A DNA stretch of 64,000 bases from Ostrea edulis (lineage: Eukaryota). The stretch lies in assembly GCF_947568905.1 (NCBI RefSeq), contig NC_079169.1, forward strand, positions 87,544,001 to 87,608,000, written 5' to 3'. The translations under genes were made by a program, and so were the position numbers. Shown piece by piece: positions 1 to 39,527 of this stretch (positions within the stretch are counted from its first letter, which is position 1; every line of letters begins with the position of its first letter). The notes under the pieces were generated by a model. That model did not search any database. It was given only the letters and a program-made list of their open reading frames with translations, and was not told where the DNA came from.

Positions 1-850
1 TGGGAATATTTATATCTTGTGATCAGTTTCCTAAAAATTACTTTGTTTAATGCTACTCTGATTCTACGCACAGGTACTCTGAAGTTGATATATGTATCAA
101 GAATATGATGGAGTTCCTCCTTGACAGTATCTAAGTAGTCTTTGGTGATTAGGTCTTCCAACACTCTGTTGGAATTCCTATGGGTACGAATTGTACTCCT
201 TCACTAGCTGACATGTTTTTGCATTCTTATAAAGCAAATCTCTCCAAAAGCCTCTACATGAGAAGAAAACATATCGCTGTGACCTTCAACTCCACATTTA
301 GACAAATCGACGACGTTTTATCTATTAATGATACTCATTTTCATTCATATGTTGATTGGATATATTTATCCCAGTGAGTTCGAAGCAAGAAACACAACAA
401 AGTCTTCTACGTCTGCTTCCACTTGGATATTTTATTGAAGTTGATTGGAAACAGCAATGTAAAACTCAACAAACGAGATGACTTCAGCTTTTCCATCGTC
501 AACTTCCCGTAATCATGTAGCAATATTACAAAATCACCTGCATATGATATTTATGTCTTTCAACTGGTTCGATAAACAATAGCATCTTCTGCGTATGATA
601 ATTCTTAAATGGAGCCAGACTACTGACAAATAAGTTTTTGTTATAGTGGTTTCAATAATCTCGTTTAAATTCAGCATTTCGCAATTGTATTGTCGTTATA
701 ACGATCTAATTTACAACTACGATATGTGGGTAAAATGAACACTATCTGACTTGTTTGACACCATTCTTAGGCCGTTTTGGCTCACTGATTTTGACTACGG
801 ATCACTCTGTTTACCTGATCAAGATATAGAGCAAGATATATCGTAAGTAT
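1..850 (+). mobile_element. Decayed Penelope-like (Naiad-type) reverse transcriptase fragment, arm1 copy
   Basis: GIPMGTNC-P-LAD-FL and FR--DDVLS RT motifs (ORF 180-377), followed by degenerate RDDFSFSIVNFP; interrupted by stops and frameshifts. Confidence 0.85.
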
Positions 851-2180
851 CCCTTGACCCAATGCTCAAAATAATCTACAACAATATTTCAAACTTCTCT
901 ACCATTCCATAACACTCAGCTTCTCTTAAATCTTTGGCATTTTGTACAGAAGTACTGAATTGATTTAAAGAAAAAAATGAATTGATTTGTTAATTGTTTA
1001 TTGAACACATTCAAAACACAGAATACAAGTTAGAGGAAGGACATCTTTATACAGCATGGCGTACGTGAATCTCAGCAACACTACAAAACAATAGAATTAA
1101 CACAGCAATTATATATACTTTGGTATATTTATCACACAACTGATCTATATATATGTGTGTGTCAGAAAGTCACGATCTCCAGAGAATCAAACATAAAAGA
1201 TACAATGTCAAAGATATGTTGTGAAAACCAGCTTTCATTCAGTCTTCTAGAACAGTAATATTACAGGAGTGTACACGGAACAAATACTGCCTTCAATGAT
1301 TATTTTGTTGGGAGAATTAAATCAGAAATATGAAAAATGGCTAACACCTCACAAATGTTAAAGCAATTTGATAACAAATGTACACATTTGTATACCGTGG
1401 TGCCTGTAATATAGATTGATCTTAATTTAGTTGTTTAAAATATTAATCATCTAACATACTACTGGGAAATTATTGAACCAACATGTCAAGAGAACAAATA
1501 GAATTCATGAAATTCATATTATAAAGACTAATTTCGACATCTGAGTGAACGATATTAATCACAGAATAGCGGTAACACTATGTCATTTCAACAATTTAGA
1601 TTTATGGAACAGAAAATCACGATATATGCTCAATAAAATGATAATTTAATGTCCAATGGTCACCACAGTTACTGGATTAAATCTACTGATACAGTAATGA
1701 GACTTATGCTATAATTATGTCCCCGATACAGGCATGTTATCACTTCCTTCCATCATTATTTGAGTCGAAATTTTCATGACCTAACCCTTTTGTTCTCAAT
1801 TTGTAGACGTCTTGATATGTCAATTTGATCTTACCCTTATTTTAACACACCAACTTCACCCTCCTCTTATTTGTAAGGATCTTATCTAAATGCTTCATCT
1901 TCAATATCACCCTATTACCACTTCAATTTAAATCTCCCTTGGTCTTAATTGACCTTAACGGCGGTCATGTTGTACCTAGTATGCTTAAATTTCTAATGTG
2001 GTGTGTAGAGAGGAAATGAAGAATATTCTGAAAATTCCTTCTACACAGTAAATAAAATACCAACGAAAGAGAATTAGAATGATGATGGGACTACTTGGAT
2101 CAGAAAAGCAAGGCCATGTCTTAAGCTCAGGTGACTTCCATCAAAATGAAACTAGTGATATGGAAGAGAATGAATAAAAC

Positions 2181-3154
2181 CTACGCCATTTCACATATAT
2201 AATTGTTGAGATCGGTGCAAGGATCATCTGTCCACGTCATTACATAGCCTGGTTCATTTCGAAAGACTACACAATTTTCGTTTCCATATCTGTTGTTAGG
2301 CTGGATGGTACCCCAGTTGGTATAGGTAGCAGTTTTACCGGAGGATATCCAAACAAATGTATCTTCTTCGACGATATCAGTTAAACCAATGTAGAAACCA
2401 TGGTATCCTAATATGTAGACAAAGTTATCAATATGTAAGTGAATTCAAATAGGAATATCAAATATTTCATTGTGACAAGGGTATTCATTTACATTCTTTT
2501 TAAATAGAAATATTTGCTCTTGGAATAAACATTGAGGAATCACAAACCAGACTGTTTGACGGGGTTTTCAAGAAATTTCTGTGTCGCGACATCGTCCACT
2601 GTGGCCAAAGACGCAGTCCTGCCATACTGAGAACCAATTGCTTGGCAGAGTTTCTTAAGGAAAAGAAGAGAGTCTGTGTTATTCGTCATCAATTACAGCT
2701 TTGAGATTTTATGCAATATCTGTAACATGTCATGAATGACGATTCTAGAGTATATTTAATGAATGTAAGGACAGAGAAATGAATGTTTACCAGTGCTCCG
2801 GCAAGCGTCTCGTTGTCTTTGCTGAGGAAGAAACATCTGTCATTGTGTGCACTCCAGTTAGTGGGACAAACAGCGAATACTTCAATCAAAGATTAAAATA
2901 ATGTAATCATACATGTGTATGTCTGAAAACAAACCATATACCCCACCTCCCGAAACAGAAACTCAAATGAAACTAAAGGAAACTTTTCCAAGAATCCGAA
3001 TATTTGAAAAATGTAGAGTACTTCAAATGAAATTCACAAATGATTAAAATCAAAGAACAGTTTCTGCCATTCTTTAGTACTTGAATAGAATATGCATCCA
3101 AATAAACTTACCTGTGGTCAGTGCTGTGAGAAAGATGAGGAGCTGAATATTCAT
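2181..3154 (-). CDS. C-type lectin type A, copy A1. Four exons: 3154-3112, 2879-2791, 2653-2548, 2407-2181; ~154 aa, secreted, perlucin-like CTLD
   Basis: Signal peptide MNIQLLIFLTALTTG; CPTNWSAHNDRCFFLS; YIGLTD; WGTIQPNN; ENCVV; WTDDPC; YICE. All introns GT-AG with consistent phases. Confidence 0.92.
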
Positions 3155-4279
3155 TTTGGACGGTTGATTATTTGTAATCTGTAGAGAAACCAAGTTGGTG
3201 CACTTATATAGTGCTGCAATTTTGATAAGAAGTCACGGAGAGAAAGGTTATAATGTAGAACCTAAAGAAGAACACCATTCACATCTCCTAGGTGGATGAA
3301 GACCTTACAATCATCACGTTTAATTTAGTAGGCGTAAGATTTGACTACACGACATTAAAGGAAACGAAAATTATCAATATATACTGCATGACAACATGAT
3401 AACACTGTTTATCATAATCATTACATATTGGGGGAATTTGGTCCCAATTTTGATTTCTTTACAGGAGCAATAAAGGTTTGAGGGTGAATTCAAAACAGAA
3501 TGAAAAATATAACAATGCATGTGGGTTTGGATGAATGTAGGACATTAATTTCGAAGTACATAGCATGAACAAATGAAAATCATGTAACTTTCTTAATTCT
3601 ATAATTTGTAGTTGATAATCAGTATATACAATGTGTCGCAATAATAATTGTATTTAGATACCTCTGTGAGCATACTGTAACTCTCCCAGTCATTCACTGT
3701 TTGCAGTTGTATGTCCCGCTAGAATATTTTGCTGAATTAGAGGCACCACCAGCTTAAGGCAAAAAGCATCAGATTTAGGGTTTTTAATTCCGTTTCCATG
3801 ACTTTAAGATATCTTACGTTGATGAGTTGTATTTGTGGATATAAAAACACCTTTACTTAAGAAACGTAATGTAGACTATTTCGTTAATTTTATTTGTCTA
3901 AAGATATTTTATTTGCACTACTCTACATGGTATAAATTGGTATTTTTTAAAACAAATTTACTAGTGCACCATTTGCTTTGTACGTGGGTGAAAGTCGGTC
4001 AACCAAATCACGAAAACTAGAATATATGATATTTCAGTTTCCACTAACGAGAAAGAATTGCATATTTAGATAATCTGAAACGTGCATCACGTATAGGTAG
4101 TGGACATGACGTCTTGACAATGTTCTACATTGTGATCTTTCTCCGTCAACATAATCCTGTTTGATTATGTTCTATTTCCTTACCTTTCTTCACGAACCTA
4201 AAATCTTATCAAAATTACACCACTATATAAAAGCAAGAAATTGGTTTCTCTGCAGATCATTATTAATCAACCGTCCAAA
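3155..4279. promoter_or_regulatory. Divergent promoter region between lectins A1 and B1, with two TATA boxes (3204-3210 minus; 4224-4232 plus)
   Basis: TATATAA about 50 bp upstream of each ATG; both genes share the leader aaccgtccaaaATG. Confidence 0.7.
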
Positions 4280-5391
4280 ATGAATATCCAGCTCCTCATC
4301 TTTCTCGCAGCGATGACCACAGGTATGTTTATAAGGATGTTGATTGTATCATCATTAATATCAGCATTTTACCGCAATTTTTTTAAAAAGAGCCTTAAAT
4401 TACCAGGGACCGGATAAATTGGAGGTCACAGCTTACTAATAAATTTTTCTGTTTGCTTTTTCAAATTACTAAGAAAGATTAGAAATAAATGAATTTTATT
4501 TTCAGTTCTGCCTACTAACAATTCTGAACTCTCTTCTAGTGTTCGCTGCCTGTCCTGCACATTGGTCTGGACATAGGGACAAATGTTACTTCTTCAGTAG
4601 AGACAATGAGACGTTTTCGGACGCTCTGGTAAATATCCGTTATTCTCTTTCTACAAAAGACATTATTTCAAAGATAATCGTCCTTGATAAATGTCTTCAT
4701 GTGTGTAGAATGACGTCATCGCTTTCTTGCAGATACTCTGTGAAATGCTAGGAGTCCAGTACCGTAGACCTGCCTCCATTGCCACCATAGATGGCGCCAA
4801 CACACAAAACTATCTGGCCAACCTGATTAGGCACTCCGGTATGTCCATCTCCTTTCAAAACCCAAAACAGATACCTTTTCCCTTGTGATTGATATACATT
4901 AAGATCGACTCAAAACTATAATTGTACTCTACTCTGTCGTTCCATTACATTCCAGGATCTAATGCTTACTATATTGGTGTCAACGATATTGTCAACGAGG
5001 GCGAATTTGTATGGATTTCTTCTGGACAGAATGCCACTTATTTGAACTGGGGTCCCGACCAGCCCAACAACCGATGGGGAAATGAAAATTGTGTTGTCAT
5101 TAGAAACGATCCAGGTCAAGGGTTTGACATGACGTGGTCAGATGACCCCTGCACTGATCTGAACACGTATATCTGCGAAATGCCGTATGTTTTCACTTTT
5201 GTTTTATCATATTACATCCTTCAAAGATTTAGGTAGGGAATTATTGATATCATTTACATCTCATGATGTTGATATCGTCTTACTAAAACTAGTACGCATC
5301 GAATGTCGACCGGTCACACCCGCCGTGAGCCCTATATCTCGATCCCAGTCGATTATTTTACAGGTACCCCAGGTTGATTACAGATTCTTAA
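4280..5391 (+). CDS. C-type lectin type B, copy B1. Five exons: 4280-4322, 4540-4628, 4733-4838, 4956-5184, 5364-5391; ~164 aa
   Basis: Signal peptide MNIQLLIFLAAMTTG; CPAHWSGHRDKCYFFS; YIGVND; WGPDQPNN; ENCVV; WSDDPC; YICE. GT-AG introns. The short last exon is inferred from a conserved acceptor and stop. Confidence 0.9.
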
Positions 5392-6174
5392 TTTTGTCGG
5401 AGGCAGTTGCAGACGATATAAGTTTGATATTCTTGAATAAATGTGGTGAAATAAAGCAGCTTCTTGTATCTGTAGTAATACACAATTATCATCTCTGAAT
5501 TAAGATTTTCAATGCTTTGATTCAGGATATTACGTTTCACTAAAACCGTTCCAACTTTACCATTAGATCGCTTTATTCTTTCTAAATGCTTGATGTCGGA
5601 CATAATGATTGTTATTCCATCATAGCATCATGAACACCAATGTGGATTCCGTGAATTATCATGGTACATGTATATCGACTTCATGGATTATCGCTGTTTT
5701 ATAAGTTTTATTGCATCGTAAAATCATGTTAATATTTCTGTAGGAGTTTCTAAGAAGTGATACACATCTTTCAGCTTAGAAATAAAGCTATTCACATGTT
5801 TTTTTGTATTGTAGTGCTGCTGAGATTCACATTCCGATTGTTGGATAAAGAGTAATGCATTATTATTGTATTTTGTGTGTTATATGTATATACTGTACAA
5901 ATAAATTATCTTATTTTTTGTCTGCTAAATCTTTAAAAAATATGGTATTTATTCACATAATGTCAAATAATTATTTTCAAGAATGATTATACCTGAAAAA
6001 GGTATTCAAATAGAAAAGTCAAACTGATTAGAGGTTAAGTAAGATTCATAAAGATTGAATAGAGGTAAAGAAGAATTGTTACAAATTAACAGTAAATGTA
6101 TTCTGAGAGAAGGCAATCAACAGTTCATACGTATTGACAATGGGAATTCGATAGTACATACATATAGACACATG

Positions 6175-7859
6175 GATTGAGAGCAGACATTCAACTGTCA
6201 TACTAATCGAGACAAGATAATCAACTGTCATACAGATTGAGACAAGACAATCAACTGTTATACAGATTGAGACAAGATAATCGACAGTCATACAGAATGA
6301 GATAACACAATCAACTGTCATACAGATTGAGATAACACAATCAACAGTCATACAGAATGATATAAGACACAACCAACTGTCATACATATTGAGATAAGAC
6401 AACCAACTGTCATACAGATTGAGACAACATAATCAACTGTCATACAGATTGAGAAAAGACAATCAACTGTCATACAGATTGAGATAAGACACAATCAACT
6501 GTCATACAAATTGAAACAACATAATCAACTATCATACAGAACGCGATAAGATAATCAACAGTCATACAGAATGAGACAAGATAATTAACTGTCATACAGA
6601 ATGAGACAAGATAATTAACTGTCATACAGATTGAGACAAGATAATTAACTGTCATACAGATTGAGAAAAGATAATTAACTGTCATACAGATAGAGACAAG
6701 ATAATTATCTGTCAAACAGAATGAGATAAAATAATCAAATGTCATACAGATTGAGACAAGATAATTAACTGTCATACAGAATGAGACAATATAATTAACT
6801 GTCATTCAGATGGAGACAAAATAATTGTCATACAGAATGAGATAAAATAATCAACTGTCATACAGATTGAGACAAGATAATCAACTGTAATACATTTTAA
6901 GGCAAGATAATTAACTGTCATGCAGATTGAGATAAGATAATCAACTGTTATACAAATTGAGACAAGATAATCAACTCTAATACATTTTGAGACAAGATAA
7001 TTAACTGTCATACAGATTGAGACAAAATAATTAACTGTCATACAGATTGAGAAAAGATAATTAACTGTCATACAGATAGAGACAAGATAATTATCTGTCA
7101 TACAGAATGAGATAAGATAATCAACTGTCATACAGATTGAGACAAAATAATTAACTGTCATACAGAATGAGATGATATAATTAACTGTCATACAGATTGA
7201 GACAAGATAATTAACAGTCATACATAATGAGATAAGACAGGTAACTGTCATACAGATTGAGATAAGACAATCAAAAGTCATACAGAATGAGATAAGATAA
7301 TCAACTGTCATACAGATTGAAACAACATAATCAACTCTCATACAGTTTGAAATAAGAGAATTAAATGTCATACAGATTGAGACAAAAATAATCAACACTC
7401 ATACAGATTGAAACAAGATAATCAACTGTCATACAGATTGAGATAAGACAATCAACAGTCATACAGATTGAGACAAGATAATCAACCGTCATACAGAATG
7501 AGATAAGATAATTAACTGTCATACAGATTGAGACAAGATGATTAACTGTTATACATATTGAGACAAGATAATTAACTGTCATACAGATTGAGAAAAGATA
7601 ATTAACTGTCATACAGATTGAGACAAGATAATTAACTGTCAAACAGATTGAGACAAGATAATTAGCTGTCATACAGATTGAGACAAGATAATTAACTGTA
7701 ATACAGATTGATACAAGATAATTAACTGTCACACAGATTGAGATAAGATAATCAACAGTCGTACAGAGTTAGATAAGACAATCGATAGTCATATAGAATG
7801 AGATAAGACAATTAACTGTCATACAGATTGAGATAAGATAATCAACTGTCAAACAGATT
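6175..7859. repeat. 30-bp satellite array (~56 units; AGATAATCAACTGTCATACAGATTGAGACA)
   Basis: Clear 30-bp periodicity; produces spurious 10-aa repeat ORFs. Confidence 0.95.
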
Positions 7860-9261
7860 ATAATTATAATTTAATGCAAAAGACAAATGTACTAACATTC
7901 GTTTATTAAAATGTACATAAATTTTGAAAAATACAAGTCAACTGAGCCGCAAAATGACTCACTTAGCATGACGAAGCGTCTAGCTGTGAAGGTAGCAATA
8001 TTAGTTCTTTTGAGCCTATTTATCAAATTATTGTAAATGTAGTAATTGAAGGTGAAGTTTGAAGTTCGTTGGGACAGAAAATATGTGTAGGCTATGAATG
8101 CAATGCGTATTTTGCTGCCCTTAAAGATCGACTTTGAAGTAGACTACATGAAAACTTACCCTTGCATGCAACGTTGTCGCTAATAGTAAGTCCGACACAA
8201 GAAATATACAAACAAGTGATTAATTGCGATCCACAGCTCAATGTGACTGACGTCATCTGATATGAAATATGACGTATGATTGTTTTTTTGAAAGGCAGAT
8301 CAAGCAATGAAGCAACCCCCTTCCCCAAGGAGAAATGTATATCAAAATGAGCAGGCTTCTGTTTACTTGGTAAATAATTAATTCGAATATAATTTCTTTG
8401 GCTTTACCTATTATTCGACCATGACACAGAGAAAGATCTTTTCCAACAGTGATTTGCGTACAAGTAGATGGTAATTGACAAGGAGAAAAAAATATGTATA
8501 TTAAACCAAAATATCGTATTGCACGCGTTGACTTTCTATTCCAAATGCAAGGCCCAAAAGATTGCTGCAATGTAAATTTCAAGAGAGAAAAATAGTTCCG
8601 GCAACTGGTTGTCAAGGGGCATGTCCCCATACCAAACCAGGTTATACAAAAATAATCTGCGCTCCTCAATTTAAATTTGACCAATCAGAGACTAGAATAC
8701 AATATGAATTAAATTATAAGAGAATAATTTCAGTGTATTGTATGTAGTCATTAACAAGAGTTGAAAATATATTTCAAAGAATAGATTAAAACGATTGATA
8801 TTTCGCACAACCATCAAAATAATTTCGACGTCAAATAAATTCAAACATATTTTGGAGTATGAAATGATATTTTTCAGACATGCATAGGTATTTATAAATG
8901 CACATTGAAAACAATTTGTCAGTAAAAATATTATATTCTCGTAATCATTTATTTTGTAGTTTCTTTGCATTAAAATAGTTAATTCTCTAACTAATATCAC
9001 CTCAGCTGCCGAAAGTTCAAATTGAATATATACTACACTACACCAAAATGCACTTTATCATAAGGTGTAAACCGACTACACCGGGTATATAACGGTGTTA
9101 TGAAATGAAGACCAACCATACAGATTGAGAGGAAACAAACGACAGCCATAGAGATTGAGAGGAAACAAACGACAGCGATACAGATTGAGACAGGACAATC
9201 AACAGTCATAGTGATTTATACATGTTAACGAAAATGTAAACACATGAAGGTAAAGATTGAT

Positions 9262-9661
9262 TTTGATGCACCAGATGCGCATTTCAACAAATAATGTATC
9301 TTCATTGATGCTCAACCGAAATGTTTGAAATTCGAAATAGCAATGAAGTTTTAGAGCTATTTTAGGGGGAAACAGAGTGCCTAAAAAGTGGAGTAAAATT
9401 CATCTAAGGATAAGAGCTATGCGTGAGGGAGATAATCCTTAATATTCAAATTAATTTCTAAATTTTATAACAGGAATTAAATATACATCCGTATTTTCAA
9501 GCTAGTAACGAAGTATTTAGCTACTGGGCTGTAGAGACTCTGGGGGACTAACAGTCCACCAGCAGAGGTCTCGACGCAGGGGTCATAATGTAAAACTTAT
9601 ACGGTACCAATTTTGATGTACCAGATGCGCATTTCGACAAATAATGTCTCTTCCGTGATGC
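9262..9661 (-). mobile_element. Non-LTR retrozyme monomer flanked by two minimal hammerhead motifs, at the centre of palindrome 1
   Basis: Predicted cleavage sites at 9274 and 9624 are 350 nt apart. Both cores are mutated (ATGAAGA, CGGAAGA). Matches copies at 28.6, 38.5, 50.0 and 56.4 kb. Confidence 0.82.
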
Positions 9662-9693
9662 TATTTCGGATTTCAAACATTTCGGTTGAGCAT

Positions 9694-9737
9694 GCAAGGT
9701 GAAGATAACGAACAGTGATCAATCTCATAACTCCTAC
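9694..9737 (-). mobile_element. 44-bp Naiad 3' tail inserted into a third, inverted hammerhead copy
   Basis: gcaaggtgaagataacgaacagtgatcaatctcataactcctac lies between gagcat and aatgaagatacattatttgtc. Confidence 0.8.
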
Positions 9738-10324
9738 AATGAAGATACATTATTTGTCAAAATGCGCATCTGGTGCATCAAAATTGGTACCGTGTAAGTT
9801 TTACATCAATCTTTACCTCGATGTGTTTATATTTTCGTTAACATGTATAAATCACTATGACTGTCGACTGTCCTGTCTCAATCTGTATCGCTGTCGTTTG
9901 TTTCCTCTCAATCTGTATGGCTGTCGTTTGTTTCCTCTCAATCTGTATGGATGGGCTTCATTTGATTACACCGCTGTATACCTGGTGTAGTCGGTTCACA
10001 CCTTATGATAAAGTGCATTTTGGTGTAGTGTAGTATATATTCAATATGGACGTTCAGCAGCTGAGGTGATATTAGTTAGAGAATTAACTATTTTAATGCA
10101 AAGAAACTACGAAATAAATAATTACGATAATATGATATTTTTAATTACAAATTGTTTTCAATGTGCATTTATAAATACCTATGCATGTCTGAAAAATATC
10201 ATTTCATACTCCGAAATATGTGTGGATTTATTTAACGTCGAAATTATTTTGATGGTTGTGCGAAATATCAATCGTTTTAATCTATTCTTTGAAATATATT
10301 TTCAACTCTTGGTCTTGACTACAT

Positions 10325-10917
10325 GCACGGTGAAGATAACGAACAGTGATCAATCTCATAACACCTACAACCAATACAAAATAGATAGTTGGGAAAACAC
10401 GGACCCCTGGACACACCAGAGGTGGGATCAGGTGCCTAGGAGGAGTAAGCATCCCCTGTTGACCGGTCACACCCGCCGTGAGCCCTATATCCTGATCAGG
10501 TAAACGGAGTTATCCGCAGTCAAAATCAGTGTGCCAAGAACGGCTTAACAATCGGTATGAAACACGTCAGACAGCATTTGACCCAATGTGAGGTTGTATT
10601 GACGAACCAGATCGTTATAACGACCATAGAATTTGCGAAATGCTGACTTCAATCGAGACTGTTGAAATCCCTGTACCATCAACTTGTTTGTCAGTAGCTT
10701 ACCTCGATTTAAAAACTGACTATACCCAGAACAAGCTCTTGCATATCGAATCAGTTGAGATATATAAACACCATATGCAGGTATTAATGGAATATTGCTA
10801 CACAAATATGGGAAGTTGACGATGGAGAAGCTGAAATCATTCCGTTTGTCATACAGTTGAGTCGTCAGTTTGCCGTTAATGTCTACTTTCAATAAAATAT
10901 CTAAGTATGAAGCAGAA
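10325..10917 (-). mobile_element. 5'-truncated young Naiad-type Penelope-like element (RT C-terminus plus 3' UTR)
   Basis: ORF 10545-10928: SASYLDILL, LYDKR-DFSFSIVNFP, SNIP--PAYGVYISQLIRYARACS; fixed 3' end. Confidence 0.9.
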
Positions 10918-11296
10918 TCTTGTCTCAATCTGTATGACAGTTGGTTGTCTTATCTCAATCTGTATGACAGCTGGTTGTCTTATCTCAATCTGTATGACAG
11001 CTGGTTGTCTTATCTCAATCTGTATGACTGTTGATTGTCTTATCTCAATCTGTATGACAGTTGGTTGTCTTGTCTCAATCTGTATGACAGTTGGTTGTCT
11101 TATCTCAATCTGTATGACGGTTGTCTTATCTCAATCTGTATGACAGTTGGTTGTCTTGTCTCAATCTGTATGACAGTTTGTTGTCTTGTCTCAATCTGTA
11201 TGACAGTTGGTTGTCTTATCTCAATCTGTATGACAGTTGGTTGTCTTATCTCAATCTGTATGACAGTTGGTTGTCTTATCTCAATCTGTATGACAG
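10918..11296. repeat. Short 30-bp satellite array fused to the 5' end of the Naiad insertion (~13 units)
   Basis: ttggttgtcttatctcaatctgtatgacag repeats; absent at the equivalent site in arm1 and arm3. Confidence 0.9.
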
Positions 11297-12174
11297 ATAC
11301 AATACACTGAAATTATTCTCTTATAATTTAATTCATATTGTATTCTAGTCTCTGATTGATCAAATTTAAATTGAGGAGCGCAAATTATTTCTGTATAACC
11401 TGTTTCGGTATGGGGACATGCCTTTTGACAACCAGTTGCCGGAACTATTTTTCTCTCTCGAAATGTACATTGCAGCACTGTTTTGGGCTTTGCATTTGGA
11501 ATAGAAAGTCAACGCGTGCAATACGATATTTTGGTTTAATAAACATATTTTTTCCTCGTTGTCAATTATCATCTACTTGCACGCAAATCACTGTTGCAAA
11601 AGATCTTTCTCTGTATCATGGTCGAATAATAGGTTAAACCAAAGATATTATATTCGAATTAATTATTTACCAAGTAAACATAACCCTGTTCATTTTGAAA
11701 TACATTTCTCCCTGGGGAAGAGGGTTGCTTCTTTCAAAAAAATAATCATACGTCATATTTCATATCAGATGACGTCAGTCACATTGAGCTGTGGATCGCA
11801 ATTAATCACTTGTTTGTATATTTCTTGTGTCGGACTTACTATTAGCGACAACGTTGCATGCAAGGGTAAGTTTTCATGTAGTCTACTTCAAAGTCGATCT
11901 TTAAGGGCAGCAAAATACGCATTGCATTCATAGCCTACACATATTTTCTGTTCCAACAAACTTCAAACTTCACCTTCAATTACTACATTTACAATAATTT
12001 GATAAATAGCCTCCGAAGAACCAATATTGCTGTCTTCACAGCTAGACGCTTCGTCGTGGTTGCTAAGTAAATCATTTTGCGGCTCAGTTGACTTGTATTT
12101 TTCAAAATGTATGTACATTTTAATAAACGAAGGTTGGTACATTTGCCTTTCGCATTAAATCATAATTATAATTT

Positions 12175-13935
12175 GTATGCCTGTTGATTGTCTTATCTCA
12201 ATCTGTACGACAGTTGATTATCTTATCTCAATCTGTATGACTGTTGATTGTCTTATCTCAATCTGTATGACTGTTGATTGTCTTATCTCAATCTGTATGA
12301 CTGTTGATTATCTTATCTCAATCTGTATGACTGTTGATTGTCTTATCTCAATCTGTATGATTGTTGGTTGTCTTATCTCAATCTGTATGACTGTTGATTG
12401 TCTTATCTCAATCTGTATGACTGATGATTGTCTTATCTCAATATGTATGACTGTTGATTGTCTTATCTCAATCTGTATGACTGTTGATTGTCTTATCTCA
12501 ATTTGTATGATTGTTGGTTGTCTTATCTCATTCTCTATGACTGTTGATTGTGTTATCTCATTCTGTTTGACAGTTGATTGTCTTATCTCAATCTGTATGA
12601 CTGTTGATTATCTTGTCTCAAACTGTATGACAGTTGAGTATTTTGTCTCAATCTCTATTACTGTTGATTATCTTGTCTCAATCTCTATGAAAGTTGATTG
12701 TCTTATCTCAATCTGTATGATTGTTGATTGTCTTATCTCATTCTGTATGATAGATTATTGTCTTATCTCAATCTATATGCCTGTTGATTGTCTTATCTCA
12801 TTCTGTATGACAGTTGATTGTCTTATCTCAATATGTAGGATTGTTGATTGTCTTATCTCATTCTGTATGACAGTTGAATGTCTTGTCTCAATTTGTATGA
12901 CTGTTGATTATCTTGTCTCAAACTGTATGATAGTTGATTATCTTGTCTCAATTTCTATGACTATTGATTATCTTGTCTCAATCTGTATGACAGTTGATTG
13001 TGTCTTATCTCAATCTGTATAACAGTTGATTATCTTATCTCAATCTGTATGACAGTTGATTATCTTGTCTCAATCTATATGACAGTTGATTGTCTTATCT
13101 CAATCTGTATGACTGTTGTCTTATCTCATTATGTATGACTGTTGATTATCTGGTCTCAATCTTTATGACAGTTGATTATCTTGTCTCAATCTGTATGACT
13201 GTTGATTATTTTGTCTCAATTTGTATGACATTTGATTATCTTGTCTCAATCTGTATGATAGTTGATTGTCTTATCTCAATCTGTATGACTGTTAATTGTC
13301 TTATCTCATTATGTATGACTGTTGAATATCTTATCTCAATATTTATGACAGTTGATTATATTGTCTCAATCTGTGTGACAGTTGATTATCTTGTCTCAAT
13401 CTGTATGACAGTTGATTATCTTATCTCATTCTGTATGACAGTTGATTATCTTGTCTCAATCTGTATGACAGTTGATTATATTGTCTCAATCTGTATGACA
13501 GTTGATTATCTTGTCTCAATCTGTGTGACAGTTGATTATTTTGTCTCATTCTGTATGACAGTTGATTATCTTATCTCATTCTGTACGAGAGTTGATTATT
13601 TTGTCTCATTCTCTTTGAGAGTTGATTATTTTGTCTCATTCTGTATGAGAGTTGATTATTTTGTCTCATTCTGTATGCCTGTTGATTATCTTATCTCATT
13701 CTGTACGAGAGTTGATTATTTTGTCTCATTCTCTTTGAGAGTTGATTATTTTGTCTCATTCTGTATGCCTGTTGATTGTCTTATCTCAATCTGTTTGACA
13801 GTTGATTGTCTTATCTCAATCTGTATGACTGTTGATTTTCTTATCTCATTCTGTATAACAGTTGATTGTCTTGTCTCAATCTGTACGACAGTTGAATGTC
13901 TGCTCTTAATTTCTATGACAGTCGATTATCGTGTG
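12175..13935. repeat. 30-bp satellite array, arm2 (~58 units)
   Basis: Reverse complement of the 6175-7859 array type. Confidence 0.95.
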
Positions 13936-14713
13936 TCAATATATATGCACTATCGAATTCCCATTGTCAATACGTATGAACTGTTGATTGCCTTCTCTCA
14001 GAATACATTTACTGTTAATTTGTAACAATTCTTCTTTACCTCTATTCAATCTTTATGAATCTTACTTAACTTCTAATCAGTTTGACTTTTCTATTTGAAT
14101 ACCCTTTTCAGCTATAATCATTCTTGAAAAGAATTGTTTTACATTATGTGAATAAATACCATATTTTTTAAAGATTTAGCAGACAAAAAATAAGATAATT
14201 TATTTGCACAGTATATACATATAACACTCAAAATACAATAATAATGCATTACTCTTTATCCAACAATCGGAATGTGAATCTCAGCAGCACTACAATACAA
14301 AGAAAACATGTGAATAGCTTTATTTATAAGCTGAAAGATGTGTATCACTTCTTAGAAACTCCTACAGAAATATTAACATGATTTTACGATGCAATAAAAC
14401 TTATAAAACAGCGATAATCCATGAAGTCGATATACATGTACCATGATAATTCACGGAATCCACATTGGTGTTCATGATGCTATGATGGAATAACAATCAT
14501 TATGTCCGACATCAAGCATTTAGAAAGAATAAAGCGATATAATGGTAAAGTTGGAACGATTTTAGTGAAAAGTAATATCCGGAATCAAAGCGTTGAAAAT
14601 TTTAATTCAGAGATGATAATTGTGTATTACTACAGATACAAGAAGCTGCTTTATTTCACCAGATTTATTCAAAAATATCAAACTTATATCGTCTGCAACT
14701 GCCTCCGACAAAA

Positions 14714-17700
14714 TTAAGAATCTGTAATCAACCTGGGGTACCTGTAAAATAATAGACTGAGATCGAGATATAGGGCTCACGGCGGGTGTGACCGGTTGAC
14801 ATGGGATGCTCACTATTTCAAGTAAGACGATATCAACATCATGAGATGTAAATGATACCAATATTTCCCTACATAAATCCTTGAAGGATGTAATATGAGA
14901 AAACAAAAGTGAAAACATACGGCATTTCGCAGATATACGTGTTCAGATCAGTGCAGGGGTCATCTGACCACGTCATGTCAAACCCTTGACCTGGATCGTT
15001 TCTAATGACAACACAATTTTCATTTCCCCATCGGTTGTTGGGCTGGTCGGGACCCCAGTTCAAATAAGTGGCATTCTGTCCAGAAGAAATCCATACAAAT
15101 TCGCCCTCGTTGACAATATCGTTGACACCAATATAGTAAGCATTAGATCCTGGAATGTAATGGAACGACAGAGTAGAGTACAATTATAGTTTTGAGTCGA
15201 TCTTAATGTATATCAATCACAAGGAAAAAGGTATCTGTTTTGGGTTGTGAATGGAGATGGACATACCGGAGTGCCTAATCAGGTTGGCCAGATAGTTTTG
15301 TGTGTTGGCGCTATCTATGGTGGCAATGGAGGCAGGTCTACGGTACTGGGCTCCTAGCATTTCACAGAGTATCTGCAAGAAAGCGATGACGTCATTCTAC
15401 ATGCATGAAGGCATTTATCAAGGACGATTATCTTTGAAATAATGTCTTTTGTAGAAAGAGAATAACGGATATTTACCAGAGCGTCCGAAAACGTCTCATT
15501 GTCTCTACTGAAGAAGTAACAGTTGTTCCTATGTCCAGACCAGTGTGCAGGACAGGCAGCGAACACTAGAAGAGAGTTCAGGGGCCCGTTTTACAAAAGG
15601 TCGTAAGTCTTAAAATTAGTCGTAAGACATAACTTACGATGAGAGACCGTTTTACAAAGATTTAGGATTTACGAGTTACGTTGAAATTCGACCTTAAGTC
15701 TACGACCGCCCGGGGGCGACCCTATGTCCCAAGTTTTGTCGTAAGTGCTCCATAAAATCTTTGTTACTATGGTTATTAAAATAATTCAACATGGCTGCAT
15801 TTCTAATGTTTAATGTTATGAATGAGACTCATAAAAAACGTGCGCTGTGGGTGTTTTGCGATAAAAATAATCCATTGGACTACTTCAATGATGTTGAGGT
15901 AGTCGAGAGGTATCGTTTACCCAGGCGGTATCTCTACGAGTTAACATATTTAGTGCGGGGAGACGTAGAGCATCCTACAAACCTAAGCAAGGCTGTACCA
16001 GCTGTTATTCAAGTACATGCCATGATTCATTATTGTCTGCACACATAAAGGCCTGTCCTGCCTCCTTTGTTTACTACAATGCGTCACCTCCTCTGATGAC
16101 TTCGTCACACAAAATGTGGTTACGTACTCGTATATCTCCGTCAGTGCGCAAATCAAACAAATGTAGCAAGTGTGTGCCATAAGACCCATTGCAATGTTTT
16201 ACAATGTTTGTATATTCCTGCATAGACCATACTTTTTCCAATGATCATGATGATGTTGACTACTTCAAGCATTTTTAAAAAGAATATGCATGTCATATCA
16301 GATCTTATTTCGACGCACCCATCCACACGTAGGCCTAGTTATGTACACCTATATTATACATGTATGCACTTACATGTACTAGGACATCATTTATTTGCAC
16401 GGTGTTATCCAATACCATGGTAGATTTATACCAATTATTAGCATGTATGAGAAAGACACTGTATTGGGAAAAATTGTGAGTGAATTAATCCCTAACCCTT
16501 TTCCACGTCCGCCCCCATCCATTGAATTATCAGTTAGGCCTATTAGTATGTTTGTAAATGTATTTCAAATGGAAAAATACATTGTGAGTGAATTAATTAA
16601 TTAATAACTACAGCCCCCCATTATACCAGTTATTAGTATTTATGAAAAAATAGACGGTGTTGCATTTTTTTTTAACTGTGATTGAATGCCCCCCCCCCCC
16701 TAACAAGTACCATCATCGATCATATTGCTTGTTATATAGCCATTAACGAACTGCAAAGATTCACCTTTCCGTCCTATATTAGACCACTTGATACAGCCAC
16801 GTACCTGTAGAATAATGATTTTATATCACCTAGTATATCATGTAGATTATAATACACAAGAATAACTCTTATCTAAAATCTAACTTTTAAAAAATCAAGT
16901 TAACTTCCTTGATATTGGAAATCTGTAATTAATATTAAGATAATTAGGAATATATATAATTTGAGATCAAATAATAAGTCTAATTATTCATATAATACGC
17001 ATGCATTAGCACAACTAACTTATAATTAGCAATCTGACCCCCCCCTCCCACCTTAGTCTTGTAACTCGAATATAAATACATGTGCATTTGTATATATGTA
17101 TGTAAAAACAAAATACTTGCTTATAACATACTATGCAGTAATTAAGAATTATTTATATGTACATGTATTGATCAGCTTCAAATGGTCAACATTCAATCAA
17201 CAGGTTTTGGCTACAGTCAGGTGCCTTACTACCCCCCCCCCCTTGATTTATTTTGGCGATATTTTCTTCAAAATGTGTGGATTCCCTGTCTATCCCATTC
17301 CAATTTAGATAGTCGTTTCACTGTTAGTATGAATTAGTAGCTTATTAATTAATGTATCAATTCAGATTGTATGCCAACAAGTTTGGTAAATCAATAGATT
17401 GAATTGAATAAATTTACTTCGCTTAATTAGCAATGCAAATATATAATTTAAAGTCAATTTGCTCCAATTTTCTTTCCTCCCCAGTGTCTGTGCGTCAAAC
17501 TGTCGGGTTTCCCGCGGTATCTATGTTCAATTCTACAACTTCATGCGCTGAAGAGTTCCATATACGACTTGCGACAAAAGAATTTACGATATACGATTAC
17601 GATACATTTTGTAAAACGGTCCTACGATCTGTCGTAAGTTCTTCAAATTTATGACTTAGGACTTAAAATTTACGACCTTTTGTAAAACGGGCCCCTGAAT

Positions 17701-17934
17701 TGTTAGTAGGCAGAACTGAAAATAAAATTCATTTATTTCTAATCTTTCTTAGTAATTTGAAAAAGCAAACACAAAAAATTATTAGTAAGCTGTGATCTCC
17801 AATTTCCCCAGTCCCTGTAATTTAAGCCCCTTTTTATTGCGGTAAAATGCTGATATTAATAATGGTACAATCAACATCCTTCTAAACGTACCTGTGGTCA
17901 GCGCTGCGAGAAAGATGAGGAGCTGGATATTCAT
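14714..17934 (-). CDS. C-type lectin type B, copy B2. Exons 17934-17892, 15565-15477, 15372-15267, 15149-14921, 14741-14714; Harbinger insertion in intron 1
   Basis: Same exon structure as B1 and open frame (HRNNC and IDSAN variants). Confidence 0.88.
15582..17694 (+). mobile_element. Non-autonomous PIF/Harbinger DNA transposon, 2113 bp
   Basis: TIR GGGCCCGTTTTACAAAAGGTCGTAA; flanks CAG and CTG at an original CAG site; ORF 15791-16048 resembles the HARBI1-type transposase N-terminus (VFCDKNNPLD...RYRLPR...QV). Confidence 0.88.
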
Positions 17935-19504
17935 TTTGGACGGTGGATTAATAATGATCTGCAGAGAAACCAATTTCTTGCTTTTATATAGTGGTGTAAT
18001 TTTGATAAGATTTTAGGTTCGTGAAGAAAGGTAAGAAAACAGAACATAATCAAACAGGACTATGTTGAAGGAGAAAGATCAAAATGTAGAACATTGTCAA
18101 GACGTCGTGTCCACTACCTATACGTGATGCACGTTTCAGATTATCTAGATATGCAATTCTTTCTCGTTAGTGGAAACTGAAATATCAAATATTTTAGTTC
18201 TCATGATTTGGTACACCGACTTTCACCCACGTACAAAGCAAATGATGCACTAGTAAATTTGTTTTAAAAAATACCAATTTATACCATGTAGAGTAGTGCA
18301 AATGCAAGGTGAAGATAACGAACAGTGATCAATCTCATAACTCCTACAAGCAATACAAATTAGATAGTTGGGCAAACACGGACCCCTGGACACACCAGAG
18401 GTGGGATCAGGTGCCTAGGAGGAGTAAGCATCCCCTGTTGACCGGTCACACCCGCCGTGAGCCCCAAATCCTGATCAGGTAAACAGAGTTATCCGCAGTC
18501 AAAATCAGTGTGACAAGAACGGCTTAACAATCGGTATGAAACACGTCAGGCAGCATTTGACCCAATGCGAGGTTGTATTGACGACCTAGATCGTTATAAC
18601 GACCATAGAATTTGCGAAATGCTGACTTCAATCGAGACTGTTGAAATCCCTGTACCATCAACTTGTTTGTCAGTAGCTTACCTCGATTTAAAAACTGACT
18701 ATACCCAGAATAATAAAATATCTTTAGACAAATAAAATTAACGAAATAGTCTGCATTACGTTTCTTAAGTAAAGGTGTGAAACATTATTCTGTTTCTGGG
18801 TTTTTATATCCACAAATACAACTCATCAACGTAAGATATGTTAAAGTCATGGAAACGGAATTAAATATCTAAATCTGATGCTTTTTACCTTAAGCTGGTG
18901 GTGCCTCTAATTCAGCAAAATATTCTCGCAGGTCGTACAACTGCAAACAGTGAATGACTGGGAGAGTTACGGTATGCTCACAGGGGTATCTAAATACAAG
19001 TATTACTGCGACACATTGTATATACTGATTATCAACTAGAAATTATAGAATAATTCATCAAGAAAGTTACATGATTTTCATTTCTTCATGCTGTGTACTT
19101 CGAAATTAATGTCCTACATTCATCCAAATCCACATGCATTGTTATATTTTTCATTCCGTATTGAATTCGCCGTAAAACCTTTATTGCTCCTGTAAAGAAA
19201 TCAAAATTGGGACCAAATTCCCCCAATATGTAATAATTATGATAAACAGTGTTATCATGTTTTCATGCAGTATACATTGATAATCTTCGTTTCCTTTCAC
19301 CCAATGTCGTGTAGTCAAATCTTACGCCTACTAAATTAAACGTGATGATTGTAAGGTCTTCATCCACCTAGGAGATGTGAATGGTGTTCTTCTTTAGGTT
19401 CTACATTATAACCTTTCTCTCCGTCACTTTTTATCAAAATCGCAGCACTATATAAGTGCACCAACTTGGTTTCTCTACAGATTACAAATAATCAACCGTC
19501 CAAA
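17935..19504. promoter_or_regulatory. Divergent promoter region B2/A2, containing a Naiad insertion
   Basis: TATA boxes at ~17982-17990 (minus) and 19449-19456 (plus). Confidence 0.65.
18304..18710 (-). mobile_element. 5'-truncated Naiad-type element in the arm2 promoter region
   Basis: Near-identical to 10325-10730; absent from the other three arms. Confidence 0.88.

Positions 19505-21489: not shown

Positions 21490-21492
<3 letters not shown>

Positions 21493-21535
<43 letters not shown>
21493..21535. repeat. (TA)n microsatellite, expanded in arm2
   Basis: Direct reading; the arm1 and arm3 equivalents are short. Confidence 0.95.
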
Positions 21536-21539
<4 letters not shown>

Positions 21540-28513: not shown

Positions 28514-28560
<47 letters not shown>

Positions 28561-28566
<6 letters not shown>

Positions 28567-37054: not shown

Positions 37055-38454
37055 ATAATTATAATTTAATGCAAAAGACAAATGTACTAACCTTCGTTTA
37101 TTAAAATGTACATAAATTTTGAAAAATACAAGTCAACTGAGCCGCAAAATGATTCACTTAGCATGACGAAGCGTCTAGCTGTGAAGGTAGCAATATTAGT
37201 TCTTCTGAGTCTATTTATCAAATTATTGTAAATGTAGTAATTGAAGGTGAAGTTTGAAGTTCGTTGGGACAGAAAATATGTGTAGGCTATGAATGCAATG
37301 CGTATTTTGCTGCCCTTAAAGATCGACTTTGAAGTAGACTACATGAAAACTTACCCTTGCATGCAACGTTGTCGCTAATAGTAAGTCCGACACAAGAAAT
37401 ATACAAACAAGTGATTAATCGCGATCCACAGCTCAATGTGACTGACGTCATCTGATATGAAATATGACGTATGATTGTTTTTTTGAAAGGCAGATCAAGC
37501 AATGAAGCAACCCCCTTCCCCAAGGAGAAATGTATTTCAAAATGAGAAGGCTTCTGTTTACTTGGTAAATAATTAATTCGAATATAATATCTTTGGCTTT
37601 ACCTATTATTCGACCATGACACAGAGAAAGATCTTTTCCAACAGTGATTTGCGTACAAGTAGATGGTAATTGACAAGGAGAAAAAAATATGTATATTAAA
37701 CCAAAATATCGTATTGCACGCGTTGACTTTCTATTCCAAATGCAAGGCCCAAAACAGTGCTGCAATGTAAATTTCGAGAGAAAAAATAGTTCCGGCAACT
37801 GGTTGTCAAGGGGTATGTCCTCATACCAAACCAGGTTATACAAAAATAATCTGCGCTCCTCAATTTAAATTTCATCAATCAGAGACTAGAATACAATATG
37901 AATTAAATTATTAGAGAATAATTTCAGTGTATTGTATGTAGTCATTAACAAGAGTTGAAAATATATTTCAAAGAATAGATTAAAACGATTGATATTTCGC
38001 ACAACCATCAAAATAATTTCGAAGTCAAATAAATTCAAACATATTTTGGAGTATGAAATGATATTTTTCAGACATGCATAGGTATTTATAAATGCACATT
38101 GAAAACAATTTGTCAGTAAAGATATCATATTCTCGTAATCATTTATTTCGTAGTTTCTTTGCATTAAAATAGTTAATTCTCTAACTAATATCACCTCAGC
38201 TGCTGAAAGTTCATATTGAATATATACTACACTACACCAAAATGCACTTTATCATAAGGTGTGAACCGACTACACCGGGTATATAACGGTGTTATGAAAT
38301 GAAGACCAACCATACAGATTGAGAGGAAACAAACGACAGCCATAGAGATTGAGAGGAAACAAACGACAGCGATACAGATTGAGACAGGACAGTCGACAGT
38401 CATAGTGATTTATACATGTTAACGAAAATGTAAACACATGAAGGTAAAGATTGA

Positions 38455-38856
38455 TTTTGATGCACCAGATGCGCATTTCAACAAATAACGTATCTTCATT
38501 GATGCTCAACCGAAATGTTTGCAATCCGAAATAGCAATGAAGTTTTAGAGCTATTTTAGGGAAAAACAGAGTGCCTAAAAAGTGGAGTAAAATTCGTCTA
38601 AGGATAAGAGCTATGTGTGAGGGAGATAATCCTTAATATTCAAATGAATTTCTAAATTTTATAACAGGAATTAAATATACATCCGTATTTTCAAGCTAGT
38701 AACGAAGTATTTAGCTACTGGGCTGTAGAGACTTTCGGGGACTAACAGTCCACCAGCAGAGGTCTCGACGCAGGGGTCATAATGTAAAACTTATACGGTA
38801 CCAATTTTGATGTACCAGATGCGCATTTCGACAAATAATGTCTCTTCAGTGATGCT
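38455..38856 (-). mobile_element. Retrozyme monomer at the centre of palindrome 2
   Basis: Cleavage sites at 38468 and 38818 (350 nt apart); the 38818 motif keeps the CTGAAGA...GAAA core. Confidence 0.85.
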
Positions 38857-38887
38857 ATTTCGGATTTCAAACATTTCGGTTGAGCAT

Positions 38888-38931
38888 GCAAGGTGAAGAT
38901 AACGAACAGTGATCAATCTCATAACTCCTAC
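38888..38931 (-). mobile_element. 44-bp Naiad 3' tail inside a hammerhead copy (same event as 9694-9737)
   Basis: Identical insertion point and sequence. Confidence 0.8.
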
Positions 38932-39527
38932 AATGAAGAGACATTATTTGTCGAAATGCGCATCTGGTGCATCAAAATTGGTACCGTATAAGTTTTACAT
39001 CAATCTTTACCTTGATGTGTTTATATTTTCGTTAACATGTTTAAATCACTATGACTGTCGACTGTCCTGTCTCAATCTGTATCGCTGTCGTTTGTTTCCT
39101 CTCAATCTGTATGGCTGTCGTTTGTTTCCTCTCAATCTGTATGGATGGGCTTCATTTGATTACACCGCTGTATACCTGGTGTAGTCGGTTCACACCTTAT
39201 GATAAAGTGCATTTTGGTGTAGTGTAGTATATATTTTTAATTACAAATTGTTTTCAATGTGCATTTATAAATACCTATGCATGTCTGAAAAATATCATTT
39301 CATACTCCGAAATATGTGTGGATTTATTTAACGTCGAAATTATTTTGATGGTTGTGCGAAATATCAATCGTTTTAATCTATTCTTTGAAATATATTTTCA
39401 ACTCTTGTTCATGACTACATGCACGGTGAAGATAACGAACAGTGATCAATCTCATAACACCTACAACCAATACAAAATAGATAGTTGGGAAAACACGGAC
39501 CCCTGGACACACCAGAGGTGGGATCAG

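What the first reader, a model, noticed from the sequence alone, without database searches (positions are those of the whole stretch)
9262..9800. Palindrome centre is a hammerhead retrozyme, and the inversion breakpoint is inside the ribozyme
The 316-bp spacer (9343-9658) between arm1 and arm2 is the body of a 350-nt retrozyme monomer. Arm1 ends at ...gaaatagca. At the second hammerhead (…ttccgtgaTGCT) the sequence switches through a 4-nt TGCT microhomology into the reverse complement of arm1. Minimal type-I hammerheads in 170-400-nt tandem repeats are known metazoan non-LTR retrozymes that make circular RNAs. I know of no report of one seeding a gene-bearing inverted duplication. The proposal that fold-back or template switching at the retrozyme created the lectin palindrome is inference.
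Basis: partly seen in the sequence, partly recalled or inferred. Interest (0 to 1): 0.85.

Follow-up and report, generated by a model that had tools for sequence, protein, structure and literature searches.

The report
Old fold-back junction inside decayed oyster retrozyme
The centre of this lectin-gene palindrome lies in an old, decayed copy of a common oyster hammerhead "retrozyme" repeat, and the join looks like an ordinary fold-back duplication junction, with no sign that the ribozyme element caused it.

Summary
Arm 1 ends at 9342, a 316-bp unique spacer follows (9343-9658), and arm 2 starts at 9659. TGCT/AGCA is a 4-bp inverted microhomology at the spacer edges (chance about 0.5%).

The spacer and the inner 81-148 bp of both arms are one insertion of a 349-nt repeat family with at least 3,969 candidate loci in this 895-Mb oyster genome. 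The family's majority sequence is a canonical minimal type-I hammerhead (Rfam RF00163, full length, E=2e-5, 31 bits against a cut-off of 34). The copies at this centre are decayed and get no Rfam hit. The join touches only the outer 3 nt of helix I and removes no core nucleotide.

The same centre and junction occur again at 38405-39004 (97.7% identical). This is therefore one event, later copied.

My best reading (about 0.55) is a classical fold-back inverted duplication that happened inside a retrozyme copy already there and already mutated. A causal "seeding" role is not shown: none of 25 other loci examined has palindromic flanks.

One rival stays open (about 0.2). Elements of this Penelope-like type often insert with an inverted, 5'-truncated partner, and I saw inverted partners at 2 other loci. 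Such a short inverted repeat could have primed the palindrome.

Earlier notes of this scan had already described this retrozyme family elsewhere in the genome.

The parts
8739..9261 (+). Innermost non-retrozyme flank of arm 1 (copy A). It is the mirror of 9807-10324.
   Evidence: 31 differences in 520 aligned sites (6.0%) against arm 2.
9262..9342 (-). Retrozyme part of arm 1: monomer positions 281-349 plus the first 14 nt of the 3' tail. 22 nt of the tail are deleted. Contains hammerhead copy 'b' with C3>A and G10.1>U.
9343..9658 (-). Unique 316-bp spacer (the loop of the fold-back). It is retrozyme body plus hammerhead copy 'a' (motif at 9661..9618; U4>G in this copy, canonical core in the second palindrome).
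   Evidence: the monomer is 6.0% from the family majority. for the second palindrome.
9659..9662 (.). TGCT, the 4-bp inverted microhomology with AGCA at 9339-9342. This is the inversion junction. It is monomer 311-314 read on the minus strand and monomer 281-284 read on the plus strand.
   Evidence: chance of 4 bp or more = 0.005.
9659..9693 (+). Arm 2 retrozyme, monomer positions 281-315.
9694..9736 (+). 43-nt 5'-terminal fragment of an unrelated, very high-copy element, inserted between helix I nucleotides of hammerhead copy 'c'. Present only in arm 2 and its duplicate.
   Evidence: Read depth is about 20,000 per orientation against about 1-6 in the flanks.
9737..9806 (+). Arm 2 retrozyme, monomer 316-349 (hammerhead 'c': C3>A, G12>A) plus the complete 36-nt 3' tail.
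9807..10324 (-). Innermost non-retrozyme flank of arm 2 (copy B).
10325..11289 (+). Insertion found only in arm 2: the same high-copy element family, carrying a 30-nt tandem repeat. The empty site is in arm 1 at about 8741.
38405..39004 (.). Second copy of the whole centre (palindrome C/D). It has the same junction, the same 43-nt insert and the same 22-nt tail deletion.
   Evidence: 600 bp colinear, 97.7%.
4922..5236 (+). C-type lectin domain exon in arm 1. Its mirror copy is at 14869-15183 on the minus strand.
   Evidence: PF00059, E=1.4e-11 for both.

Best explanation
Proposed sequence of events:
1. A 349-nt hammerhead retrozyme inserted next to a C-type lectin gene segment, with its 3' tail against what is now the arm flank. 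Its structure was [partial monomer][one full monomer][36-nt tail].
2. It decayed neutrally for a time and acquired C3>A and T283>C.
3. A break or collapsed fork on the 5' side of the element left a 3' end that folded back. That end annealed through 4 nt (TGCT on AGCA) 316 bp behind itself and was extended. Extension copied the last 105 nt of the retrozyme and then more than 13 kb of flank in reverse.
4. The 316 bp in the loop stayed single-copy and became the spacer.
5. The arms then diverged by about 6% near the centre. Arm 1 lost 22 nt of the tail. Arm 2 gained a 43-nt fragment and a roughly 965-bp copy of another element.
6. Finally the whole palindrome was duplicated about 29 kb away.

Shown: the anatomy, the microhomology, the order of mutations, and the family identity. 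Inferred: the fold-back step itself, and that the retrozyme's presence at the break was incidental.
For: - Spacer plus inverted microhomology at its edges is the signature described for fold-back inverted duplications. That study found 2-8 bp in 13 of 21 human junctions and inverted Alu/L1 copies at 3 of 21 (PMC3907307).
- The join links monomer position 311 to position 281 in opposite orientation. It is not a homologous crossover.
- Both arms carry the same tail-to-flank junction, so one insertion was duplicated.
- All four arms share C3>A and T283>C. These positions are invariant in 29 family monomers. The spacer hammerhead lacks C3>A. So the arm copies were one DNA after the insertion had begun to decay.
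- The timing fits. The central monomer is 6.0% from the family majority, against a family median of 2.6%. The arms differ by 6.0%, about 3% per lineage. The arm retrozyme parts differ at 3 of 83 sites. The two palindromes differ by 0.8-2.9%.
- Indels and substitutions group A with C and B with D near the centre.
Against: - No unduplicated allele or paralogue was found. The unique flank occurs only in the copies at this locus, so the ancestral state is not observed.
- The head-to-head layout, with both 3' tails pointing outward, is also what a Penelope-type insertion with an inverted 5'-truncated partner looks like. See PMC8557442 and loci L025 and L028.
- A 5' start at monomer 311 also occurs in an ordinary insertion (L019).
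- 3 differences in 83 sites is too few to separate the models firmly.
- The central join is not verified by reads.
Confidence: 0.55

Rival explanations
1. Seeding by an insertion-born inverted repeat. The retrozyme integrated in the way typical of Penelope-like elements, as a direct copy plus an adjacent inverted 5'-truncated copy. The TGCT join was made at integration. This gave a roughly 105-bp inverted repeat with a 316-bp spacer. A later break beside it allowed intrastrand annealing of the two copies and fill-in, which turned the flank into a giant palindrome.
For: [quoted passage not shown]
- This family shows the first three in every one of 25 loci. It shows inverted partners at L025 and L028.
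- Both 5' ends here (positions 311 and 281) lie in the normal range of 5' starts.
- From general knowledge: short inverted repeats next to a break are known to prime large palindromes in yeast, Tetrahymena and mammalian cells. PMC3907307 cites Tanaka's 229-bp repeats.
Against: - The source RNA's last monomer would need to have carried C3>A (a dead ribozyme) and T283>C. Both are absent from 29 sampled monomers.
- The two arm copies differ at only 3 of 83 sites, no more than the flanks do. No extra age of the repeat over the palindrome is visible.
- Neither other locus with inverted copies has palindromic flanks.
Confidence: 0.22
2. Later insertion. A palindrome already existed, and a head-to-head retrozyme pair inserted exactly at its axis, for example at a nicked cruciform tip.
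For: The outward-facing tails and perfectly mirrored flanks are formally compatible. Earlier notes of this scan mention palindromic Penelope/hammerhead insertions elsewhere in the genome (unchecked).
Against: - It needs insertion at the exact symmetry axis of a palindrome without a spacer.
- The retrozyme is about 6% from its family majority, while each arm has changed by only about 3% since the arms split.
- It needs the same dead-ribozyme source as the rival above.
Confidence: 0.05
3. The retrozyme DNA itself caused the break, for example by fork stalling at its hairpin-prone ribozyme region. On this view the family is a recurrent hotspot for inverted duplication.
For: - The family is about 8 times denser in this 154-kb lectin cluster (2.2%) than its genome-wide lower bound of 0.26%.
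- Arrays lie within 180-360 bp of two other copy boundaries.
Against: - None of 25 other loci has inverted flanks.
- The other boundaries do not coincide with retrozyme ends. One retrozyme in the cluster is a later insertion into an existing copy.
- The junction is not in the palindromic TGCGCA loop or in helix II.
Confidence: 0.08
4. Assembly artefact: a chimeric fold-back read, or haplotypes collapsed or duplicated.
For: A 140-N scaffold gap (22977-23116) lies between the two palindromes, so the second palindrome could be the other haplotype placed in tandem.
Against: - The arms differ by 6% and by several indels.
- Arm-specific junction variants are seen in contigs of two other studies.
- The junction is assembled twice with 2-3% divergence.
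Confidence: 0.04

Closest known systems
Fold-back inverted duplications with a spacer (Hermetz et al. 2014, PMC3907307)
   Same: Single-copy spacer between the inverted arms. Short inverted microhomology (4 bp here; 2-8 bp there) at the spacer edge. Junctions sometimes lie in interspersed repeats.
   Different: This one is an old, probably fixed germline structure in an oyster, with a 316-bp spacer. The human spacers are mostly a few kb. It was later duplicated as a whole. There is no adjacent terminal deletion. The repeat at the junction is a ribozyme-bearing element.
Metazoan non-LTR retrozymes (Cervera & de la Pena 2020, PMC7229834; Li et al. 2026 preprint, 10.64898/2026.07.22.740005)
   Same: 349-nt non-coding unit in short tandem arrays, 39% GC. 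One minimal type-I hammerhead per unit, with a 1-bp helix III and a palindromic loop. Thousands of copies in a mollusc.
   Different: Circular RNA and self-cleavage were not tested here. The copies at this locus are decayed. The paper studied a mussel, not an oyster.
Penelope-like element insertion architecture (Craig et al. 2021, PMC8557442)
   Same: Variable 5' truncation, partial tandem, a fixed 36-39-nt tail after the last unit, and occasional inverted 5'-truncated partner copies.
   Different: No reverse transcriptase or endonuclease ORF; the element is non-autonomous. Sequence kinship with a particular Penelope pseudo-LTR in this genome was not tested.
Palindrome formation primed by short inverted repeats (yeast, Tetrahymena, CHO cell systems; my own knowledge, partly cited in PMC3907307)
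   Same: A short inverted repeat with a spacer sits at the exact centre of a large palindrome.
   Different: Here it cannot be told whether the short repeat came before the palindrome or is simply its innermost part.

Membership tests
Type I hammerhead ribozyme (Rfam RF00163) | Conserved core CUGANGA ... GAAA ... cleavage after H17, with helices I, II and III | tested here: met
   Family majority: GCAUCA CUGAAGA GAC-loop-GUC GAAA UGCGCA UC UGGUGC. Rfam aligns all 45 model positions at E=2e-5.
Type I hammerhead ribozyme (Rfam RF00163) | Score at or above Rfam's gathering cut-off (34 bits) | tested here: not met
   Canonical copies score 31.2 and 29.8 bits. There is no gathering-level hit in the window.
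Type I hammerhead ribozyme (Rfam RF00163) | The copies at the palindrome centre keep an intact core | tested here: not met
   First palindrome: C3>A (arm 1, arm 2), U4>G (spacer), G12>A (arm 2), and a 43-nt insert in helix I of arm 2. No Rfam hit at E<=10. Second palindrome: the spacer copy has a canonical core but one helix I mismatch, and no hit at E<=1.
Type I hammerhead ribozyme (Rfam RF00163) | Self-cleavage | not testable with these tools
   Needs an in vitro transcription and cleavage assay.
Metazoan non-LTR retrozyme | Short tandem repeats of 170-400 bp, each with a type I hammerhead, low GC, no ORF or LTR | tested here: met
   349-nt period, 1-4 full units per locus, GC 39%. No ORF of 70 aa or more in the centre.
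Metazoan non-LTR retrozyme | Expressed as a monomeric circular RNA | not tested
Penelope-type (PLE-mobilised) insertion | 5' truncation, partial tandem, 30-40-bp terminal tail | tested here: met
   In 25 independent loci, 5' starts range over monomer positions 4-331. 23 of the 25 arrays end at monomer position 35-40; the other two end at 24 and 29.
Penelope-type (PLE-mobilised) insertion | Sequence kinship with the pseudo-LTR of an autonomous PLE in the same genome | not tested
   The hammerhead-plus-tail module has about 7-30 times the read depth of the rest of the monomer. That hints it is shared with other elements, but no PLE was examined.
Fold-back inverted duplication | Single-copy spacer flanked by inverted microhomology, followed by mirrored arms | tested here: met
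   316-bp spacer, 4-bp AGCA/TGCT (P=0.005), arms mirrored for more than 13 kb.
Fold-back inverted duplication | An ancestral unduplicated allele whose sequence runs on past the junction | not testable with these tools
   No other copy of the unique flank exists in this genome. Orthologues in other species could not be reached.
Palindrome seeded by an inverted repeat | The short inverted repeat existed before the palindrome | tested here: inconclusive
   Inverted partner copies exist in the family (L025 and L028). But the arm copies here share private mutations and are no more diverged than the flanks.

The most novel reading that the evidence does not exclude
A by-product of Penelope-type integration, the inverted 5'-truncated partner copy of a hammerhead retrozyme, supplied a roughly 105-bp inverted repeat. 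That repeat primed a palindromic duplication of more than 13 kb carrying a C-type lectin gene. On this reading, this class of small ribozyme-bearing elements would be a built-in generator of palindromic gene amplification in bivalve immune-gene clusters.
Probability: 0.2. Interest if true: 0.55.

Novelty: new member of a known kind. Interest (0 to 1): 0.3.

Why it matters
The locus is a clean, datable natural example of a fold-back inverted duplication that doubled, and later quadrupled, a C-type lectin gene segment in an oyster. Its junction is preserved at base resolution. It also shows that this oyster retrozyme family inserts like a Penelope-like element: fixed 36-39-nt tail, 5' truncation, occasional inverted partner. 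If such inverted partners were shown to seed palindromes repeatedly, that would link a small ribozyme-bearing parasite to the expansion of immune-gene families. On present evidence it is a single coincidence and needs no new mechanism.

Tried and rejected
- **Rfam on the centre.** No hammerhead hit at E<=10 and none in the whole window at gathering level. The family identity had to be shown on canonical copies elsewhere.
- **Single-strand folding.** MFE folds of the motif do not recover the hammerhead, and z-scores are near 0. This is expected for a minimal, dimer-type ribozyme, so it is not used as evidence.
- **Homologous recombination between two inverted retrozymes.** Rejected, because the join links monomer 311 to 281, which is not a homologous register.
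- **Twin-priming-type inversion alone.** Rejected as a full explanation, because the mirrored sequence continues more than 13 kb beyond the element.
- **The 43-nt insert as a templated insertion of the same repair event.** Dropped. It starts at the exact 5' terminus of a very high-copy element after 'CAT', as does the full copy at 10325. It is therefore a truncated element copy. My first reading of a 10-bp target duplication for the 10325 insertion was also wrong; at most 2 bp are duplicated.
- **Retrozyme arrays as markers of the outer copy boundaries.** Not exact. They are 180-360 bp off, and the one upstream of the window is a later insertion into an existing copy.
- **Reads over the central join.** Uninformative. 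The 'opposite strands' joints at 9657/9693 and 9662/9688 are simply canonical family reads from other loci.

Full report
**1. What is at the coordinates**

Reading 8800-10300 and the repeat scan show the layout. A mirrored pair sits at 8739-9261 and 9805-10327 (523 nt, 94%). Inside it lie shorter mirrored pieces.
- The reverse complement of 9262-9342 matches 9659-9693 plus 9737-9784.
- Arm 1 therefore ends at 9342, arm 2 starts at 9659, and 9343-9658 (316 bp) is unique.
- AGCA (9339-9342) and TGCT (9659-9662) are a 4-bp inverted overlap.
- In 200,000 random 316-bp spacers taken from the window, an overlap of 4 bp or more occurs in 0.5%.

**2. What the repeat is**

A search of the window's own genome (895 Mb, 52 contigs) with 9262-9662 gave 3,969 first-look candidates. 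The scored ones were 92-94% identical to the query. The sequencing runs that hold the flank are labelled oyster.

In 25 independent loci the element always has the same build:
- a 5'-truncated monomer, starting anywhere from position 4 to 331;
- one to three full 349-nt monomers;
- a tail made of the first bases of the next monomer, ending at position 35-40 in 23 of the 25 loci (24 and 29 in the other two).

Of 56 ribozyme segments from these loci, 50 read GCAUCA-CUGAAGA, and most continue GAC-AUUAUUU-GUC-GAAA-UGCGCA-UC, followed by UGGUGC. That gives a 6-bp helix I, a 3-bp helix II, and a helix III reduced to A-U around a palindromic loop. This is the minimal, dimer-type type-I hammerhead.

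Rfam aligns canonical copies to all 45 positions of Hammerhead_1 at E=2e-5 and 31.2 bits, just under the 34-bit cut-off. The monomer is 39% GC.

Tandem units of this size, low GC and a type-I hammerhead are the published description of metazoan non-LTR retrozymes, about 5,000 copies of which occur in a mussel (PMC7229834). 5' truncation, partial tandems, a 30-40-bp tail and an occasional adjacent inverted 5'-truncated copy are the published hallmarks of Penelope-like element insertions (PMC8557442). [quoted passage not shown]

Earlier notes of this scan describe the same family elsewhere in this genome. I treat those as leads only.

**3. The centre in monomer coordinates**

On the minus strand:
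- 9662..9624 is monomer 311-349 (hammerhead 'a').
- 9623..9274 is a full monomer ending in hammerhead 'b'.
- 9273..9262 is the first 12-14 nt of the tail.

On the plus strand:
- 9659-9693 is monomer 281-315.
- 9694-9736 is foreign sequence.
- 9737-9770 is monomer 316-349 (hammerhead 'c').
- 9771-9806 is a complete 36-nt tail.

The two copies therefore meet head to head, with both tails facing the flanks. The join links position 311 to position 281. It overlaps only the outer three nucleotides of helix I of copy 'a' and removes nothing from that motif.

All three copies here are damaged:
- 'b' and 'c' have C3>A.
- 'c' also has G12>A and a 43-nt insert inside helix I.
- 'a' has U4>G and a helix I mismatch.

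Rfam reports no hammerhead here at E<=10.

**4. One event, later copied**

The window holds four copies of a large unit: A (1-9342, plus), B (9659-22976, minus), C and D. A fifth partial copy lies upstream of the window.

The centre 9211-9810 recurs colinearly at 38405-39004 with 97.7% identity. It has the same junction, the same 43-nt insert and the same 22-nt tail deletion.

Near the centre, A and C differ at 9 of 520 sites and B and D at 2 of 237. A and B differ at 31 of 520. The palindrome therefore formed first and was then duplicated as a whole.

In the distal arms the signal is mixed. A-C is 2.5%, A-B 3.5% and B-D 4.2%, with conflicting site patterns. I read this as exchange between copies.

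A 140-N gap separates the two palindromes. I cannot exclude that the second is the other haplotype.

**5. Order of mutations**

- C3>A and T283>C are present in all four arm copies. These positions are invariant in 29 sampled family monomers. Copy 'a' lacks C3>A.
- GUC>GUU is shared by A and C only. The 43-nt insert is shared by B and D only. The tail deletion is shared by A and C only.
- The central monomer is 6.0% from the family majority, against a median of 2.6% for the other copies.
- The arms have each changed by about 3% since they split.
- The retrozyme parts of the two arms differ at 3 of 83 sites.

The simplest account is that a near-consensus copy inserted, decayed by about 3%, and was then partly duplicated together with the flank.

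**6. Mechanism**

A single-copy spacer bounded by a few bases of inverted homology is the signature of fold-back priming. That study reported 2-8 bp at 13 of 21 human junctions, and inverted Alu or L1 copies at 3 of 21 (PMC3907307).

I therefore read the join as the 3' end of a resected or stalled strand, ...TGCT, annealing to AGCA 316 bp behind it and being extended. The register of the join rules out homologous recombination between two retrozymes.

**7. Did the retrozyme cause it?**

- None of the 25 other loci has mirrored flanks next to the element.
- Two loci have inverted retrozyme copies: L025, with a 33-nt inverted tail fragment at the 5' end plus a tail-to-tail join, and L028, head to head with an 845-bp gap. 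Neither has a flank palindrome.
- The family occupies at least 0.26% of the genome and 2.2% of the 154 kb around the window.
- Arrays near other copy boundaries are 180-360 bp off. One of them is a later insertion into an existing copy, with a 4-5-bp apparent target duplication.

This is a sample of one. I judge that chance can explain it. That judgement is inference, since no genome-wide count of inverted-duplication junctions was possible.

It fits the family's habits. But it needs a source transcript with a dead terminal ribozyme, and it predicts older arm copies than are seen. I give it about 0.2.

**8. Checks with reads**

Contigs from two independent studies bridge 9206-9287 and 9783-9860. 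This confirms both flank-to-tail junctions, including the arm-1 deletion. The central join is hidden under family reads at depth in the hundreds to thousands. The 'opposite strand' joints listed there are what canonical copies elsewhere would give.

**9. Verdict**

The element is a new member of a known family. The junction is a textbook fold-back junction. The proposed causal role is unproven.

Noticed in passing
window 1-50030 and G000:C6 about 87534900-87540900: Five copies of a C-type-lectin-bearing unit in alternating orientation: Z(-), A(+), B(-), C(+), D(-). A/B and C/D are two copies of one palindrome. A 140-N gap at 22977-23116 lies between them, so the second palindrome might be a haplotype placed in tandem.
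   Followed up: partly
G000:C6:87541106-87541454 (window -2895..-2547): A retrozyme of about one monomer (positions 33-349 plus 1-42) inserted into copy Z at a site that is empty in A, B and C, with an apparent 4-5-bp duplication (AATG). It shows the family was still moving after the unit was duplicated.
   Followed up: partly
window 9694-9736, 10325-11289, also 38888-38930 and 39421 onward: An unrelated element of very high copy number (read depth about 20,000 per orientation). A 43-nt 5'-terminal fragment sits inside the arm-2 hammerhead. A copy of about 965 bp carrying a 30-nt tandem repeat sits 630 bp away. Both follow 'CAT'. In other genomic copies the terminal 41 nt are tandemly repeated with TA between them.
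   Followed up: partly
window 6175-7859, 12170-14000, 35762-37054, 42165-45057: Long arrays of a 30-nt tandem repeat (81-88% between units) inside every arm. They differ in length between arms and explain the unequal arm sizes.
   Followed up: no
L025:1381-1594: Two retrozyme arrays joined tail to tail, nearly symmetrically around the GGTACC in the 3' tail (99-nt arms, 16-nt gap). A 33-nt inverted tail fragment lies at the 5' end of the left array.
   Followed up: partly
window 9580-9689 (read depth): The hammerhead-plus-tail part of the monomer has about 7-30 times the read depth of the rest of the monomer. This suggests the module is shared with other repeat families or with an autonomous Penelope-like element.
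   Followed up: no
window 28560-29271, 50029-50311, 56347-56605; also window +102510 and +107958: Further insertions of the same retrozyme, each ending at monomer position 36-39. The local density is 2.2% of 154 kb, against at least 0.26% genome-wide.
   Followed up: partly
window 8143-8727: Part of the arm flank is itself a dispersed repeat: 1,381 first-look candidates, about 80-83% identical.
   Followed up: no
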